DNA of 64,000 nt from Octopus sinensis (taxonomy: Eukaryota): positions 43,586,001-43,650,000 of the forward strand of contig NC_043009.1 of NCBI RefSeq assembly GCF_006345805.1, in the 5' to 3' direction. The notes beneath the pieces were generated by a model. The model ran no database searches. It saw nothing but the letters and a program-made list of their open reading frames with translations, and was not told where the DNA came from. Below are positions 3,023-62,660 of the stretch, piece by piece (within the stretch, counting starts at the first letter, position 1; each line of letters opens with the position of its first letter). The translations under genes and the position numbers were made by a program.

Positions 3023-3122
3023 NNNNNNNNNNNNNNNNNNNNNNNNNNNNNNNNNNNNNNNNNNNNNNNNNNNNNNNNNNNNNNNNNNNNNNNNNNNNNN
3101 NNNNNNNNNNNNNNNNNNNNNN
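3023..3122. other. Assembly gap, 100 N placeholder
   Basis: Run of exactly 100 n. Confidence 0.99.
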
Positions 3123-3834: not shown

Positions 3835-4129
3835 GGCACTCCGTCGGTTACGACGACGAGGGTTTCCAGTTGATCCGATCAACGGAGCAGTTTACTCGTG
3901 AAATTAATGTGCAAGTGGCTGAGCACTCCACAGACACGCGTACCTCTAACGTAGTTCACTGGAAACTTCAGCGTTTTTGAAATACAGGTAGTATTCATTT
4001 TTGCCAGCTGAGTGGACTGGAGAAACGTGAAATAAAGTGTCTTGCTCAAGGACACAGCGCGTCGCCGGCAATTGAACTCATGAACTTACGATTGAGAACC
4101 GAATACCCTAACCACTAAGCCACGCGCCT
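3835..4129 (-). mobile_element. CORE-type SINE (type D)
   Basis: Minus strand GGCGCGTGGCTTAGTGGTTAGGG...GTGTCCTTGAGCAAGACACTT. Confidence 0.85.
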
Positions 4130-23140: not shown

Positions 23141-23352
23141 GGCGGTGAGCTGGCAGAACGGTTAGCACACCAGGCAAAATGCTTAGCAGCTTTTCGTCCG
23201 TCTTTAGGTTCTGAGTTTATATTCCGCTGCGGTCGACTTTGCCTTTCATTCTTTCGTGGTCGACAAAGTAAGTACCAGTTGAATACTGGGGTCGATGTAA
23301 TCGACTTACTTCTTATCCCGAAATTTCTGGCCTTGTGTCAAAATTTGAAGCC
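23141..23352 (+). mobile_element. SINE type B, about 200 nt beyond the SoxD donor site
   Basis: Complete head, body and aaatttctggccttgtg tail. Confidence 0.8.
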
Positions 23353-23557
23353 AATATATGTATATATGTGTGTGTCTTGCGTCAAAGAACATATCTAGAA
23401 ATAACTGAGGTTTGGCGACAGGAAGAGCATCTGGCTGTGGAAAACTCTGCCTCACCAAATTCCTTCCGATCAATGCGTGCAAAACGATGGTGGAGTAACA
23501 GAAGGGGGAAAAAATAAAAGAAAAATGGAGGATAAAAAAAAGGACGGGAATTCTTAC

Positions 23558-24112: not shown

Positions 24113-24481
24113 AATCCTGTAAAAGACAAAAACAGAGAAAAATGAAATGGTGAGTTTAACAAAACTTTGAAATAATAACAGAAATATTATACATGAATTA
24201 TTATTGTTGTTGAACAAGCAGCATCACCCATTATCTTTCGTTTGCTAAATATCAGTGATATAGTGAATGCAGATATGCATGAATGAACAATCGCTCAAGT
24301 AGGGAAAAAACCTATTCCTTGGAGAGAAACTTCCCAAATACTGACTGATCCGTAACCTTCGGAGACACTCGGAGATTCCGAATATTCAGCGCCAGATCGA
24401 CCCTGATCAGATACGTATGGTCTCAGCCACCCTTCCTTATTTCCAGGTGTTCAGTATTTACCCAGGTCAGAGGGCCAGGGG

Positions 24482-27839: not shown

Positions 27840-27969
27840 TTATTCTTTTATTCTTTTACTTGTTTCTGTCATTGGACTGTGGCCATGCTGGAGTATCACC
27901 TTTAGTCGAACAAATCGACCCCAGGACTTATTCTTTGTAAGCCTAAAACTATTCTAGCGGTCTCTTTTA

Positions 27970-27970: not shown

Positions 27971-28017
<47 letters not shown>

Positions 28018-28047
28018 TATATATATAATATGTGACAATTATCGGTA

Positions 28048-28116
28048 GCCGTGATAAAACTCCGAGTTTCGGATGTCGGGTGGAAATCCACGCCGCCATC
28101 TCTTCAGTTATCCGGC
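28048..28116 (-). ncRNA. Type I hammerhead ribozyme motif in a short (TA)n-flanked repeat
   Basis: Minus strand reads GCCG-GATAA / CTGAAGA / GATG..CATC-C / GAAA / CTC-G-GAG / T-T / TTATC-A-CGGC: stem I 9 bp with one bulge, intact core, all three stems in the right order. Confidence 0.75.
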
Positions 28117-28253
28117 CATCGAAAAAATTACATTTACAGATAAATTCCTCTATTTACATAATATCGAGGTCTCTTTCATTCTTTTGTTGTCTTACCATTT
28201 CTATCAATATATATATTCGGTGTATGCAAATGAAGTAGTGTTAATGGAAAATA

Positions 28254-28322
<69 letters not shown>

Positions 28323-28460
28323 AGAATATATACTGTATATACATCATTGACAGCCAAAGCGGAGAGGTTTTCGTCGGGGACAAAATCTTGTATAGACGTG
28401 ATATATTTGAAAAATAGAATTTATACGAGAGAAAGAGACAGGTCGACAGATGTATATATC

Positions 28461-28640
28461 GGTGGCAGAATCTTCAAAGCGTCGGGAAAAAGTGCTTTGT
28501 GCTTTTCGTTCCGGCTCTTTACGTCCTGTGTTCAAATCCCGCTGAGGTCAACTTCGCCTTTCATTCCCACCACAATCGATAAAACAAAGTACCAGTCAAG
28601 TACTTTGGACGACAGAATCGACAAACACCCATTTTCCCAT
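28461..28640 (+). mobile_element. SINE type B, diverged
   Basis: ggtggcagaatc...gttcaaatcccgctgaggtcaacttcgcctttcat...gtaccagt. Confidence 0.65.
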
Positions 28641-28680
28641 CGAAAACATTGTTGTTAGCCCTATCCCTAAATCAGAAACA

Positions 28681-31179: not shown

Positions 31180-31515
31180 GGCGAGCTGGTAGAAGGAATC
31201 GTGGCTTAGTTGTTAGGGCATTCAGTTCGCGATCGTAAGTTCGTGAGTTCAATTCCGGGCGAGGCGTTGTGCCCTTCAGCAAGACTCTTTAATTCACGTT
31301 ACTCCAATTCACTCAGCTGGCAAAAATGAGTAGTACCTGTATTTCAAAGGGTCATCCTTGCCGCACTCTGTGCCACGCCGAATCTCCCTGAAAACTACAT
31401 TAAGGGTACACGTGTCTGTGGAGTGCTCAGCCACTTGCACGTTAATTTCACGAGCAAGCTGTTGTGTGGATCGTATCAGCTGGGACCCACGTCGTCGTAA
31501 CCGACGGAGTGCTCC
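31180..31515 (+). mobile_element. CORE-type SINE (type D), preceded by a type B head fragment
   Basis: gtggcttagttgttaggg...cccttcagcaagactctt...gtcgtcgtaaccgacggagtgct. Confidence 0.8.
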
Positions 31516-48035: not shown

Positions 48036-48087
48036 CTTGTTAGAAATAATCATCTGGGTTCTCCTCAATAAATCGGGGCTCCCCATT

Positions 48088-48127
48088 AACAGTTTCTAGT
48101 CTTCTTAGGCCTTCATCAGAGAAGGAC
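48088..48127 (-). ncRNA. Decayed copy of the same hammerhead-like motif
   Basis: Minus strand TTCT CTGATGA A GGCC taagaa GACT A GAAAC T GTT; stem I partner lost. Confidence 0.4.
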
Positions 48128-48435
48128 AGAAATTTTTTTTTTCTTGTCTACTTAAAGATTAATTTTGGACTCAACTAAACTGGTTTGCTTAATTTGCATA
48201 ACAATGCATGCGTTGACAACATGAATTGATTAGTTTATGGTTACACCCCAGAACGTTTTTAGTTCATTTGAAAAATAAGTTATACCGTTTTTAAATAAAC
48301 ATACAAGCTTACCCATAACAAAATCTGACTGACCAGTTCAACTGATTCCTACTTCGTATGTACTATAAGCTACTATATGTGTGCTATATACTGCTATAAC
48401 TACTAATTTCATTGTGGACAGAAGACGGACATCCT

Positions 48436-48476
48436 TTCTCTGACGAGGGTCTAAAACGACCAGAAACTAGTTAGGA
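48436..48476 (+). ncRNA. Minimal type I hammerhead-like motif (Penelope-type)
   Basis: TTCT CTGACGA G GGTC taaaac GACC A GAAA C ta G T T AGGA; 4-bp stem I, palindromic AACTAGTT stem III, G.A at the base of stem II. Confidence 0.5.
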
Positions 48477-48881
48477 CGATTCTACTTTTTTCACACACAC
48501 ACATATCTATTATATCTCTGTGTGGATTGTACCGTCGTGAAACCAGGATTTTCTACACCTGAAAAATTTCGTTATTAGTCTGGAATCCGATAGTATCGAT
48601 AGCCCAGAACTCGGGGTGAGTGTTGCATTGGGAATACCCTATCTTTGGACCTTACCGAGACCTTAGTGTGTGCGTGTGGTTTTGAGCATGTGGTGTAGTG
48701 TTATCACTTAACTTTTCATTATGTTGCACAATGATATTAAACCGTTACCAAGATTTCACATTATACATGCAATCACAATCATAAAAATGTGTGTGTTTGG
48801 GCGCGTGCGTGTATACTTGTACGTTGCTTGATGTCGAACGAATGACAAAGGAAGGCAGGAGTGCTCAATACACGTTGCAGA

Positions 48882-50439: not shown

Positions 50440-50650
50440 CTACTAATAGGCACAAGGTCTGAAATTTGGTGGGGTTGGGGTAAAGTCAGTTACATCGAAC
50501 ACAGTGCATAACTGGTACTTAATTCATCGACCCCGAAAGGATGAAAGGCAAAGTGGACCTCGGCGGAATTTGAACTCAGAATGTAAAGACGGACGAAATG
50601 TCGCCAAGCATTTTTCCGGTGTGCTAACTATTCTGCCAGCTCGTTACCTT
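50440..50650 (-). mobile_element. SINE type B monomer
   Basis: aggcacaaggtctgaaattt...actggtacttaattcatcgaccccgaaaggatgaaaggc...ctgccagctcg. Confidence 0.8.
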
Positions 50651-50666
50651 TATAATAATAGTTGTA

Positions 50667-50702
<36 letters not shown>

Positions 50703-51888
50703 GAAGTGACATAGAACCAGTGCGTGTGTCATTATTGGCATAGTGACCCTCCCGAGATAGAAAAAACAAAATATGTTTCTTCAACACATGGTTTCACATC
50801 AAGAACCAAGTAAACAAAAGCAAAAAGCTAAATTATGAGTAACGTTTGATTATACTTACAAGACGAAACACAACAACATGATGGGGTGGGTGGGGGATAA
50901 ACGATTAGTAAAAAAAATACCAAAAAAAAAGGAAAGAAAATGACCCCAGCTGACCTTCATTCGGGTCATCGCGGTCAACAATTGACATATCTCAACTTCC
51001 GAAACAGAGACGGACATTACTACTGTATGTCAAGTAATATACAGCAGGGCATCGCGTTTGCATGACCACCACCATGGGGGCGGCCGCCGCTGCCACCGCC
51101 ACCGCCACATAAAAATAACTGAAAAGGGTCATAGCCGGAACGCCTTTTGATCATTGTTTCGCTAGATGACCAGGGGCCGCCAAACAATAGCAACTAGAAT
51201 AACCATATCTCCATCATCATCATCATTTATTGATTCATACAGCTAAGAGTTACAAACACACATGTATACACACACACATGCACACACACGCATAGATACA
51301 CACACACACACATACACACACACACACAGACGTTCTCGTACGACGATCGCTGATTACGAAATTCGCGTTTTACTGTCTTGGAATGGATTCATGAATGAAG
51401 TTGCTAGCAACTGGAGTAAGGGGGAGGAGGAGGAGGAGGTTTAGACAATGTGTGTGCGTGTGTGTGTATGTCTGGTGGTGGCAGTAGGAGGAGAAAAAGA
51501 GAGGGTAGAAAGAGAGAGAGTTAATGAGAAGATGAAATAAGAGTGTGTGAGAAATATAGTTTGTGTGTATGTGTGTGTGTGTGACGTAAACGGACACTGA
51601 ATTGTGTGAGAACAGAGCAACCCCACCCCCACGTCAACAGACATGTAGTACTCCAGCATGGTCACTTTTCACTGGATAGATCCAAATTTTAGACTGGTTT
51701 ATATCAAACGTTTGTACGAAGACTAAAGTGTGTATATGATTGTGTGTGTGTATGAGAGAGAGACAGACAGAGATAGAAAGTGAGGAAAAAATCTATGGAA
51801 AACCGATATATTTTATCATATTACATCATTATGTATGTATGTATGTATGTATGTATGTATGTATGTATGTGTGTGTGTTTTCTTTATC

Positions 51889-52345: not shown

Positions 52346-52771
52346 GAAAAAGAAAACTAATGTCAAAGACAGGAAAGGACGAAATGACCGATAAAGACGG
52401 ATTAAAGTGATGGAATTCGCTTGGAATGGAATGGTAAGGCGTGTGTGGTGTTACAAAGTGGAGGGGAAGGCGAAGCGATAATCCTTAAAGGCGCACGCCC
52501 TCACATCCTCATTCCTCTATCAAAAGCAAAATAAAATAAAATATATAATAATAATAATAATAATACTAGATAAAAATAAATAAGCGTAGGACGGACGAAG
52601 AAATAACGGATGCATATTCATTTGTCCTCTGTTTCAAAAAGCAGAGAAGCATACATAGATACACAAACAATCACACACAGTTCTTCTGAAAACAAAACCG
52701 TGTTTATCAAAAGACCGAATCCAGTTTCCGTAATGCTTAAAAGTTACAACATTCACTGAGAGGGAGAGGAT

Positions 52772-53170
52772 AATATTCTTTTCTACTCTAGGCACAAGGC
52801 CCGAAATTTTCGGGGACGGGGGCCAGTCGATTAGATCGACGCCAGTACGTAACTGGTACTTAATTCATCGACCCCGAAAGGATGAAAGACAAAGTCGGCC
52901 ATGGCGGAATTTGAACTCAGAGCATAAAGACAGACGAAATACCTATTTCTTTATTACCCACAAGGGGCTAAACACAGAGGGGACAGACATAGGTATTAAG
53001 TGCGTAACTGGTACTTGATTTATCGACCCCGAAAGGATGAAAGGCAAAGTCGACCATGGCGGAATTTGAACTCAGAACGTAAACACAGACGAAATACCGC
53101 CAAGCATTTCGCCCGGCGTGCCAACGTTTCTTTACCCACAAGGGCCTAAACGTAGAGGGGACAAACAGGG
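52772..53170 (-). mobile_element. SINE type B head-to-tail dimer plus extra tail fragment
   Basis: Two bodies joined at gacgaaata|cctatttcttt (52933-52950). Confidence 0.8.
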
Positions 53171-54593: not shown

Positions 54594-55176
54594 ACAATAG
54601 GTACAAGGCCTGAAATTTTTAGAAGTAGGGACTAGTCGATTATGTCGAACCCCCGTGTTTCACTGGTACTTAATTTATCGATCCAGAAAGGATGAAAGAC
54701 AAAGTCGGCCACGACGGAATTTGAACTCAGAATGTAAGCGACGGACGAAACACCTATTTCTTTACTACCCACAAGGGGCTAAACACAGAGGAGACAAACA
54801 AGGACAGACAGACGGATTAAGTCGATTATGTCGAGCCCCTGTGTTTCACTGGTACTTAATTTATCGTCCCCGAAAGGATGAAAGGCAAAGTTGACCTCGG
54901 TGGAATTGTTTGAACTCAGAACGTAACGGCAGACGAAATACCTATTTCTTTACTACCCACAAGGGGCTAAACACAGGGGGGACAAACAAGGATAGACAAA
55001 CGGATTAAGTAGATTACATCGACCCCAGTGCGTAACTGGTACTTATTTAATCGACTCCGATAGGATGAAAGGCAAAGTGGACCTCGGCGGAATTTGAACT
55101 CAGAACGTTAAAGGCAGACGAAATACGGCCACGCATTTCGCCCGGCGTGCTAACGTTTCTGCCAGCTCATCGCCTT
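54594..55176 (-). mobile_element. SINE type B head-to-tail trimer
   Basis: Three bodies, about 188-nt period, same junction at 54744-54760 and 54932-54950, one head at 55125-55176. Confidence 0.85.
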
Positions 55177-62274: not shown

Positions 62275-62660
62275 TTTGTACTAAAAGCACAAGGCCTCAA
62301 ATTTGCGAGGAGGGAACTAGTTGATTATTACATCGACCCCCAGTGTTTCACTGGTACTTAATTTATCGATCTCGAAAGGACGAAAGGCAAAGTCGATCTC
62401 GGCCGATTATTTGAATTCAGAATGTAAAAATCCGGAAGAAATGCAGAGGAGAAGCATTTTGTCCGGCGTGCTTACGGTTCCGCCAAGCTCGTCGCCCTTA
62501 TTAATTTATAATTGTTTCAACATTTGGCTCAAGAAGACATCGAAAGGACGATCGGTAAAGTCAAAGTCTACGAAATTTGAACGCAGGGCGTAAAGTGCCA
62601 GAAAAAGTGCCGTTAAGCATTTTGTGCGACGCACTCACGATTCTGCAAGCTCGTTGCTTT
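62275..62660 (-). mobile_element. SINE type B monomer plus a second diverged head
   Basis: gcacaaggcctcaaattt...gtccggcgtgcttacggttccgccaagctcg; second head at 62550-62660. Confidence 0.7.

What the first reader, a model, noticed from the sequence alone, without database searches (positions are those of the whole stretch)
28048..28116. Near-canonical type I hammerhead ribozyme on the SoxD sense strand
Seen: minus strand gives stem I GCCG-GATAA / TTATC-A-CGGC, core CUGAAGA, stem II GAUG/CAUC with an inner GUGGA/UCCAC hairpin, GAAA, stem III CUC/GAG with a 1-nt loop, and a GUU triplet. Predicted cut is between 28058 and 28057; one extra C sits at the base of stem II. Known: minimal type I hammerheads with palindromic stem III occur in Penelope-like elements and can cleave as dimers. 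Inference: if SoxD transcription starts upstream of 28.1 kb, the pre-mRNA carries a possible self-cleavage site about 4 kb before the first visible coding exon.
Basis: partly seen in the sequence, partly recalled or inferred. Interest (0 to 1): 0.8.

Follow-up and report, generated by a model that had tools for sequence, protein, structure and literature searches.

The report
Orphan hammerhead-like ribozyme motif, mollusc genome
An 81-base stretch upstream of a mollusc gene has all the signature letters and the three helices of a hammerhead self-cutting RNA, far beyond simple chance, but it is a lone copy with two structural flaws, so it is most likely an ordinary leftover of a mobile element and not a proven working ribozyme.

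Summary
On the minus strand, 28116-28048 reads stem I, CUGAAGA, stem II, one extra C, GAAA, a short stem III, GUU, then stem I. The predicted cut is between 28058 and 28057. Stem I is longer than reported, so the folded domain is 28122-28042. Under base-composition null models such a motif is expected fewer than about 0.03 times per 2.5-Gb genome. Among 27 metagenome sequences sharing the same core boxes, none has strong stems I and III.

Support stops there. No Rfam hammerhead model matches, even at E<=10. I found no second copy in the window, in related contigs or in protein-space searches, so covariation could not be tested. As a monomer the active fold is 3.7 kcal/mol less stable than a competing fold. 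Stem III cannot close with a 1-nt loop. GUU is an unusual cleavage triplet.

Long (TA)n tracts flank the motif, and Penelope-like elements favour such targets. A second, decayed hammerhead-like inverted pair lies at 48.1-48.5 kb.

Best reading: a solitary, probably decaying type I hammerhead of retroelement origin. It may be intronic, because a splice acceptor sits just before the ATG exon, but no transcription or cleavage is shown. The 'SoxD' label is unverified. This is a likely new member of a known kind, of modest interest.

The parts
28108..28122 (-). Helix I, 5' strand (2.1 = A28108). An extension UCG-A-UG lies at 28122-28117.
   Evidence: Sequence. Folds pair it with 28057-28042. Constrained energy is -16.9 kcal/mol, with P about 3e-5 to 7e-4 in random strands.
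28101..28107 (-). Core box CUGAAGA (C3 U4 G5 A6 A7 G8 A9)
   Evidence: an exact match to CUGANGA.
28072..28100 (-). Helix II hairpin: GAUG/CAUC, a G.A mismatch, CGG/CCG, a bulged C, GUGG/CCAC, and loop AUUU. An AUG at 28099-28097 (positions 10.2-10.4) opens a 65-aa ORF.
   Evidence: Folds. Constrained energy is -14.6 kcal/mol, with P <5e-5 (Markov) to 7e-4 (GC 50%). The ORF is listed.
28071..28071 (-). Extra (bulged) C between helix II and G12. It can equally be drawn at 28072, which leaves G10.1-C11.1 next to the core.
   Evidence: The two registers score -21.3 and -17.9 kcal/mol.
28067..28070 (-). Core box GAAA (G12 A13 A14 A15.1)
28059..28067 (-). Helix III, ACUC-G-GAGU. It forms 3 bp plus a CGG triloop as a monomer. 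It is a near-palindrome that could pair between two molecules.
   Evidence: In the MFE fold its UCGG pairs with CUGA of the core instead.
28057..28058 (-). Predicted cleavage site: U17 (28058) | U1.1 (28057), triplet GUU
   Evidence: Position follows from the consensus numbering applied. No cleavage has been shown.
28042..28057 (-). Helix I, 3' strand: UUAUC-A-CGGC, then UA-C-CGA
28031..28254 (-). 224-nt unique segment that carries the motif, bounded on both sides by about 55-bp (TA)n tracts (27973-28027 and 28258-28313). It may be the extent of an inserted element fragment.
   Evidence: There is no other copy in the window. It is not globally structured (z = -1.18).

Best explanation
This is a solitary type I hammerhead motif of retroelement origin. 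The source would be the kind of hammerhead carried in the terminal repeats of Penelope-like elements and in their non-autonomous derivatives, the non-LTR retrozymes. It sits in a 224-nt fragment that landed in, or is bounded by, a (TA)n microsatellite. The site is 3.9 kb upstream of, and on the same strand as, the first coding exon of a mollusc (probably octopod) gene.

Shown: the full catalytic-core consensus; three helices with the right connectivity and strong helices I and II; non-random occurrence; single copy in the window.

Inferred: homology to retroelement hammerheads. If transcribed, the RNA could cut itself after U17 (28058|28057) by the usual 2'-O-transesterification. Helix III is too short to hold the active fold, the core box CUGA is sequestered in the most stable monomer fold, a C is bulged at the base of helix II, and the triplet is GUU. 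For these reasons I expect little or no cleavage as a monomer. At best there would be weak cleavage through an intermolecular helix III between two transcripts, or with protein help.

Most likely it is a decaying relic with no host function.
For: - All 13 consensus positions are present and the pairs adjacent to the core are intact (criteria from Perreault 2011, PMC3088659).
- It is the only descriptor hit in 128 kb of strand.
- 0/600 null windows match. Energies of helices I and II are each in the 1e-5 to 1e-3 tail of random sequence, giving <=0.03 expected per genome.
- 27 metagenome sequences share the same core boxes and helix II base. None has strong helices I and III, and the best (one sequence, seen twice) reaches only 4 bp and 2 bp.
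- The centroid fold keeps helices I and II as in a hammerhead (z about -3).
- Animal PLE hammerheads have a long helix II, a short palindromic helix III, dimer dependence, low in vitro activity and extra unpaired nucleotides at the base of helix II (PMC4209133).
- PLEs favour (TA)n targets and carry the hammerhead near the element's end (PMC8557442).
- The motif lies between two of the longest (TA)n tracts in the window.
- Solo retrozyme monomers are common and dispersed (bioRxiv 10.64898/2026.07.22.740005).
- A second hammerhead-like motif, with an inverted decayed partner, lies at 48.1-48.5 kb, so such relics occur in this genome.
- As in the Anolis Poseidon element, an AUG sits at the start of helix II (PMC11167929).
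Against: - No Rfam hammerhead model scores it at E<=10.
- No relative was found: none in the window, none in 23 kb of related octopod-like contigs, and none in protein space for 3 of 6 frames. Homology to a retroelement family is therefore unproven and covariation is untested.
- No RT or GIY-YIG coding remnant lies nearby.
- The extra nucleotide is on the 3' side of helix II. PLE hammerheads have it on the 5' side, between A9 and G10.1.
- Helix I (9-14 bp) is much longer than in PLE mini-hammerheads (4-5 bp).
- (TA)n tracts are so dense here that 5% of the window lies in gaps <=250 nt between tracts.
- The 224-nt unit is not rod-like.
Confidence: 0.55

Rival explanations
1. Chance look-alike. 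The region is a stable imperfect hairpin of the kind real eukaryotic genomes hold in large numbers (foldback or MITE-like inverted repeats, hairpins next to microsatellites). Its asymmetric internal loop happens to read CUGAAGA on one side and CGAAA...U-U on the other.
For: - No Rfam hit, no other copies and no covariation.
- Three departures from a textbook hammerhead: the bulged C, the 1-nt loop 3 and the GUU triplet.
- My nulls are base-composition models that under-represent natural hairpins. Helices I and II together look like one long interrupted hairpin.
- The scan that flagged it looked at many windows.
Against: - Even given a long hairpin, both loop strands must carry 11 fixed letters in the right places, plus A15.1/U16.1/H17 and a self-complementary helix III. 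My rough estimate is about 1e-7 per suitable hairpin (an inference, not computed).
- Simple nulls give <=0.03 per genome.
- Real sequences with the same boxes lack strong helices I and III.
- A second hammerhead-like relic lies in the same window.
Confidence: 0.2
2. A working, host-used intronic hammerhead. It would lie in the 5'-UTR intron of the downstream gene on the sense strand and cut the pre-mRNA, like the domesticated intronic hammerheads of amniotes (RECK, CTCL, DTNB).
For: - It is on the same strand as the ATG exon. A strong 3' splice acceptor 4 nt before the ATG shows that an upstream exon and intron exist.
- Long stable helices I and II.
- Intronic sense-strand hammerheads are a known class (PMC6155905).
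Against: - Transcription across 28.1 kb is not shown.
- The 5.3 kb upstream of the orthologous exon in a related species (82% protein identity) holds no hammerhead-like motif and no similarity. Non-coding DNA there is too diverged for this to weigh much.
- The monomer fold disfavours the active structure and no second copy is available for a cis dimer.
- Retrozyme hammerheads are depleted in introns in the vertebrates studied.
Confidence: 0.05
3. A still-active mobile element copy. It would be one monomer of a retrozyme or PLE terminal repeat whose transcripts self-process as intermolecular dimers and circularise or retrotranspose.
For: - The unit size (224 nt) and low GC fit non-LTR retrozyme monomers of 170-400 nt with <45% GC (PMC7229834).
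- (TA)n flanks.
- An intact core.
Against: - It is a single copy, not tandem.
- Protein-space searches of three frames found no relatives in any public assembly. That would be unexpected for a high-copy active family, although ORF calling there is haphazard.
- The unit does not fold into a compact or rod-like structure.
Confidence: 0.08

Closest known systems
Minimal type I hammerheads of animal Penelope-like elements (Cervera & de la Pena 2014, PMC4209133)
   Same: - Type I topology and a canonical core with G10.1-C11.1.
- An unusually long helix II.
- A very short, nearly palindromic helix III that implies action as a dimer.
- An extra unpaired nucleotide at the base of helix II.
- An AT-rich or (TA)n insertion context.
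- An AUG at the start of helix II, as in the Anolis Poseidon element (PMC11167929).
   Different: - The extra nucleotide is on the 3' side (before G12), not between A9 and G10.1.
- Helix I is 9-14 bp, not 4-5 bp.
- The centre of helix III is an odd G, so the palindrome is imperfect.
- No pLTR, RT/GIY-YIG ORF, tandem partner or family of copies was found.
Non-LTR retrozymes and their 'solo' monomers (Cervera & de la Pena 2020, PMC7229834; Li et al. 2026 bioRxiv)
   Same: - A type I hammerhead in a short (about 224 nt), low-GC, non-coding unit.
- Solo monomers are dispersed along chromosomes.
   Different: - It is not in tandem.
- The canonical retrozyme hammerhead has a 6-bp helix I and a 4-bp helix II with interacting loops. 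This one has long helices and no obvious loop-loop pair.
- The unit is not strongly self-structured.
Conserved intronic hammerheads of amniotes (HH9/HH10; RECK, CTCL, DTNB)
   Same: - A possible sense-strand intronic position in a developmental gene.
- Type I topology.
   Different: - Those match Rfam models and are ultraconserved across species.
- This one matches no model, and no conservation could be shown.
[quoted passage not shown] 2011, PMC3088659)
   Same: - A near-consensus motif with a bulge close to the core, in repeat-rich DNA.
- This is the class those authors set aside as probably non-functional relics.
   Different: All core letters here are intact, and the pairs adjacent to the core can all form.

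Membership tests
Hammerhead ribozyme (any type) | Conserved core C3 U4 G5 A6 N7 G8 A9 / G12 A13 A14 / A15.1-U16.1 / H17 | tested here: met
   CUGAAGA, GAAA, A28067-U28059, U28058. One extra C lies between helix II and G12, or one pair into helix II.
Hammerhead ribozyme (any type) | Three helices around the core, with pairs adjacent to the core (10.1-11.1, 1.1-2.1, 15.1-16.1) | tested here: met
   helix I 9-14 bp, helix II 11 bp in segments, helix III 3 bp plus triloop. G-C, U-A and A-U pairs sit adjacent to the core.
Hammerhead ribozyme (any type) | Match to a curated covariance model (Rfam Hammerhead_1, _3, _II, HH9, HH10) | tested here: not met
   no hammerhead family at gathering score or at E<=10, even on 106 nt. 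PLE-type mini-hammerheads were found in the literature with RNAmotif structure descriptors, so this weighs against Rfam-type membership, not against hammerhead-like function.
Hammerhead ribozyme (any type) | Site-specific self-cleavage 3' of H17 that core mutations abolish | not testable with these tools
   This needs in vitro transcription and cleavage assays. Folding suggests the active monomer fold (-21.3) loses to an alternative fold (-25.0 kcal/mol).
Hammerhead ribozyme (any type) | Covariation in the helices among homologues | tested here: inconclusive
   No homologue could be retrieved. No cephalopod genome collection is searchable by DNA with these tools.
Penelope-like element hammerhead / pLTR | Location in a pseudo-LTR flanking an RT plus GIY-YIG ORF, usually in tandem or inverted partial copies | tested here: not met
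   There is no second copy. No RT or endonuclease domain was found in neighbouring stop-free segments. Only the (TA)n context fits.
Penelope-like element hammerhead / pLTR | Mini-hammerhead architecture: long helix II, helix I of 4-5 bp, unpaired nucleotide between 9 and 10.1, palindromic 15.2-16.2 | tested here: inconclusive
   The long helix II and near-palindromic helix III are met. The unpaired nucleotide is on the opposite strand, and helix I is much longer.
Non-LTR retrozyme | Tandem repeats of 170-400 nt, each with one type I hammerhead | tested here: not met
   A single 224-nt unit between (TA)n tracts. It could only be a 'solo' monomer.
Domesticated intronic hammerhead | Sense-strand position inside an intron and conservation at the orthologous site | tested here: inconclusive
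   A splice acceptor before the ATG exon shows that an upstream intron exists, but the transcription start is unknown. The one related contig shows no motif, but nothing aligns outside the exon either.

The most novel reading that the evidence does not exclude
Cephalopod genomes may carry a lineage-specific hammerhead variant with an extra unpaired nucleotide between C11.1 and G12. It is seen here as C at 28071 and as A in both copies of the 48.1-48.5 kb pair. The copy at 28.1 kb may have been retained in the 5'-UTR intron of a developmental gene, where it would cut the pre-mRNA when two transcripts or a protein stabilise helix III.
Probability: 0.06. Interest if true: 0.65.

Novelty: new member of a known kind. 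Interest (0 to 1): 0.3.

Why it matters
Hammerhead motifs number in the thousands in many animal genomes, almost all within Penelope-like elements and retrozymes. One more solitary copy is not surprising in itself.

It would matter in two cases. First, a genome-wide census might show a cephalopod family with an extra nucleotide on the 3' side of helix II. That would be a new natural core-adjacent variant. My literature searches found no paper describing cephalopod hammerheads. Second, this copy might prove conserved and cleaved within the pre-mRNA of the downstream gene. That would be an invertebrate counterpart of the domesticated intronic hammerheads of amniotes.

As it stands, the value of the result is a clean, statistically supported annotation with its limits stated.

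Tried and rejected
- Rfam at the gathering threshold on the whole window, and at E<=10 on 601 nt and 106 nt around the site and on 561 nt around 48 kb. No hammerhead family matched.
- BLAST of the 161-211-nt region against the window and against five related contigs. Only short chance matches appeared.
- Orthologous upstream region. The only long related contig (L001, 82% protein identity) aligns in the exon only. The closer species (L002-L005, 90% DNA identity) has contigs too short, and its upstream 1.1 kb is non-homologous.
- Recovering other copies through spurious ORFs in public assemblies. Three reading frames across the unit gave nothing real. Exact-ORF look-ups also gave nothing.
- Metagenome scan for CTGANGAGATG...CATCCGAAAC. 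It returned 27 hits, roughly the number I estimated by hand for chance. None was a hammerhead, so I kept them as an empirical control.
- Retrozyme-like rod structure of the 224-nt unit. Rejected (z = -1.18).
- tRNA or SINE head. No tRNA was found. The SINE-like repeats at 28455-28680(+) and 27880-27960(-) are separate elements beyond the (TA)n tracts.
- PLE coding remnants or a Sox domain in nearby stop-free segments and the exon. None was found.
- Explicit energy of a double-hammerhead dimer. It could not be evaluated because that structure is not nested in the cofold representation.
- The repeat finder on the whole window was swamped by microsatellites and gave nothing useful for this site.

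Full report
**What is there**

One search gives the minus strand from 28122 to 28042. It reads UCGAUG-GCCGGAUAA / CUGAAGA / GAUGGCGGCGUGGAUUUCCACCCGACAUC / C / GAAA / CUCGGAGU / U | UUAUCACGGC-UACCGA.

In hammerhead numbering:
- C3-A9 is 28107-28101.
- G10.1 is 28100.
- C11.1 is 28072 (or 28071).
- G12-A14 is 28070-28068.
- A15.1 is 28067, U16.1 is 28059 and U17 is 28058.
- The predicted scissile bond lies between 28058 and 28057.

Four details need correcting.
- A one-nucleotide loop 3 cannot form. As a monomer, helix III is A-U, C-G, U-A with a CGG triloop. Otherwise it is an intermolecular 8-bp helix around a G.G mismatch.
- The inner part of helix II is GUGG/CCAC with an AUUU loop, plus CGG/CCG. 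Helix II therefore has 11 bp in three segments.
- Two Cs precede GAAA, so the extra C can be drawn next to G12 or one pair further in. The second register leaves G10.1-C11.1 stacked on a fully canonical core. It costs 3.4 kcal/mol (-17.9 against -21.3 kcal/mol).

**Is it more than chance?**

My descriptor asks for CUGANGA, helix II, 0-1 extra nucleotide, GAAA, helix III starting A..U, H, and helix I. It finds this site and nothing else on either strand of the window.

In 600 first-order Markov windows of 64 kb, none reached helix lengths of 5/4/4 and one reached 5/4/3. That is about 1e-3 per window, or tens per 2.5-Gb genome, before counting the real strength of the helices.

I then factorised the estimate.
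- Core boxes plus a helix III of at least 4 pairs occur about 1.3 times per window.
- A helix II at least as stable as -14.6 kcal/mol occurs in <5e-5 (Markov), 3e-5 (GC 37%, lengths 26-46) or 7e-4 (GC 50%) of random segments.
- A helix I at least as stable as -16.9 kcal/mol occurs in 2.5e-4, 3e-5 or 7e-4 of random strand pairs.
- The product is 1e-9 to 6e-7 per window, or at most about 0.03 per genome.

An empirical control agrees. A metagenome scan for the same core boxes and helix II base returned 27 sequences, roughly the number I estimated by hand for chance. None has strong helices I and III. The best, one sequence seen twice, reaches only 4 bp and 2 bp.

One caveat remains. These nulls do not model the natural excess of hairpins in eukaryotic DNA, and helices I and II together resemble one long interrupted hairpin. 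I therefore keep a chance look-alike at about 0.2.

**What does not support a ribozyme**
- Rfam finds no family at gathering score in the window. No hammerhead family appears at E<=10 on 601 nt or 106 nt.
- The most stable monomer fold pairs CUGA of the core with UCGG of helix III (-25.0 kcal/mol). The hammerhead-compatible fold is -21.3 kcal/mol.
- GUU is allowed by the NUH rule. Natural hammerheads, however, nearly always use GUC, with GUA and AUA as the known exceptions (PMC1636495).
- The extra nucleotide is on the 3' side of helix II. The tolerated extra nucleotide of PLE hammerheads lies between A9 and G10.1 (PMC4209133).
- A long segmented helix II does have a natural precedent (Table 1 of PMC1636495).

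**Relatives**

None could be found.
- The 161-nt region has no second copy in the window.
- The exon downstream has mollusc homologues, so the window is molluscan. I think it is probably octopod.
- The 82%-identical homologue lies on a 27-kb contig whose 5.3 kb upstream shows no similarity and no hammerhead-like motif. Nothing outside the exon aligns there, so this says little.
- The 98%-identical homologue lies on contigs too short to reach the site.
- Searches in protein space with three reading frames across the unit, exploiting spurious ORF calls in public assemblies, returned nothing real.

**Context**

The motif sits in a 224-nt unique segment (28031-28254). It is bounded by two (TA)n tracts of about 55 bp, among the longest of 57 such tracts in the window. 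However, 5% of the window lies in similarly short gaps between tracts.

Beyond the tracts lie unrelated SINE-like repeats. The 224-nt unit is not globally structured, holds no tRNA and has no RT or endonuclease remnants nearby.

Points from the literature:
- PLEs carry hammerheads in their terminal repeats, favour (TA)n targets and leave truncated and inverted partial copies (PMC8557442).
- Animal PLE hammerheads have long helices II, tiny palindromic helices III and low activity, and they appear to work as dimers (PMC4209133).
- Retrozymes are PLE derivatives, and solo monomers are dispersed in genomes.
[quoted passage not shown] Here too an AUG sits at positions 10.2-10.4 and opens a 65-aa ORF. 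This may be coincidence.

The window also holds a second hammerhead-like relic. At 48440-48472(+) the sequence is CUGACGA-G-GGUC..GACC-A-GAAA-CUAG-UU, with helix I of 4 bp and a palindromic ACUAGU. An inverted, more decayed partner lies at 48067-48119(-). The two are about 80% alike by my own count across roughly 36-40 nt spanning the core. Both copies also have an extra nucleotide just before G12.

**Relation to the gene**

The ATG exon (about 24115-23553, minus strand) is preceded by a polypyrimidine tract and 'acag', 4 nt before the ATG. An upstream non-coding exon and an intron must therefore exist. The motif, 3.9 kb upstream on the sense strand, could be intronic, but the transcription start is unknown.

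The name SoxD could not be verified. The window has no HMG-box exon, the exon has no Pfam domain and its homologues are unnamed.

**Verdict**

The best explanation is a solitary type I hammerhead motif of retroelement (PLE/retrozyme) origin, probably decaying and weak or inactive on its own (0.55). The rivals are:
- a chance hairpin look-alike (0.2);
- a copy of a still-active element (0.08);
- a host-used intronic ribozyme (0.05).

It does not pass the Rfam membership test, the PLE-context test or the retrozyme tandem test. It does pass the core and helix tests, so 'works like a hammerhead' remains plausible, while membership of a specific family is unproven. Novelty is a new member of a known kind, and interest is modest.

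Noticed in passing
window 48067-48131 (-) and 48420-48490 (+): An inverted pair of hammerhead-like core segments, about 80% alike by my own count over roughly 36-40 nt, with 5' ends facing and about 320 nt apart. The plus copy reads UCUCUGACGA-G-GGUC UAAAAC GACC-A-GAAA-CUAG-UU|AGGA. It has helix I of 4 bp, helix II of 4 bp and a palindromic helix III. Both copies carry an extra A before G12. The minus copy is more decayed. This looks like relics of PLE-type terminal repeats in the inverted arrangement typical of PLE insertions. There is no Rfam hit.
   Followed up: partly
window 24116-24145 (-): A textbook 3' splice acceptor (ttttctctgtttttgtcttttacag) lies 4 nt upstream of the ATG of the first coding exon (MSSKRKNTPTK...). 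The gene therefore has at least one upstream non-coding exon. The exon has unnamed homologues across molluscs (Lottia, Batillaria) and no Pfam domain, and the window contains no HMG-box exon.
   Followed up: partly
window 28099-27902 (-): An AUG at the start of helix II (positions 10.2-10.4) opens a 65-aa ORF that runs through the hammerhead into the (TA)n tract. The ORF start lies in the same place as reported for an Anolis Poseidon PLE. It has no protein relatives and may be coincidence.
   Followed up: partly
window 28455-28680 (+); also about 50450-50740, 52734-53015, 54601-54891, 62321-62590 and 23141-23395: Multiple copies of a SINE-like repeat. Its stop-free frames give ..NWYLIHRPRKDERQS..NLNSECK.. 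and ..TGVDVIDL... Another partial repeat lies at 27880-27960 (-). They flank the (TA)n tracts around the finding but are not part of it.
   Followed up: no
whole window: Extreme microsatellite load: 57 merged (TA)n>=8 tracts plus many (TAGA)n, (ATT)n, (GT)n and (GA)n arrays. Together with the mollusc protein hits this suggests a cephalopod genome. The load swamps generic repeat finders.
   Followed up: partly
window 3023-3122: A run of 100 N, which is an assembly gap.
   Followed up: no
window 3976-4124 / 31200-31348 and 1838-1965 / 31386-31513: Two non-microsatellite inverted repeat pairs (149 nt at 87% and 128 nt at 89%), about 27-29 kb apart. They are probably dispersed copies of one transposable element in opposite orientations.
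   Followed up: no
L002 1-1135 versus window about 24470: In the closely related species (90% DNA identity over the exon region), the 1.1 kb upstream of the aligned block has no counterpart anywhere in the window. The break falls at a (GA)n/(CT)n tract. This suggests a lineage-specific insertion or deletion there.
   Followed up: partly
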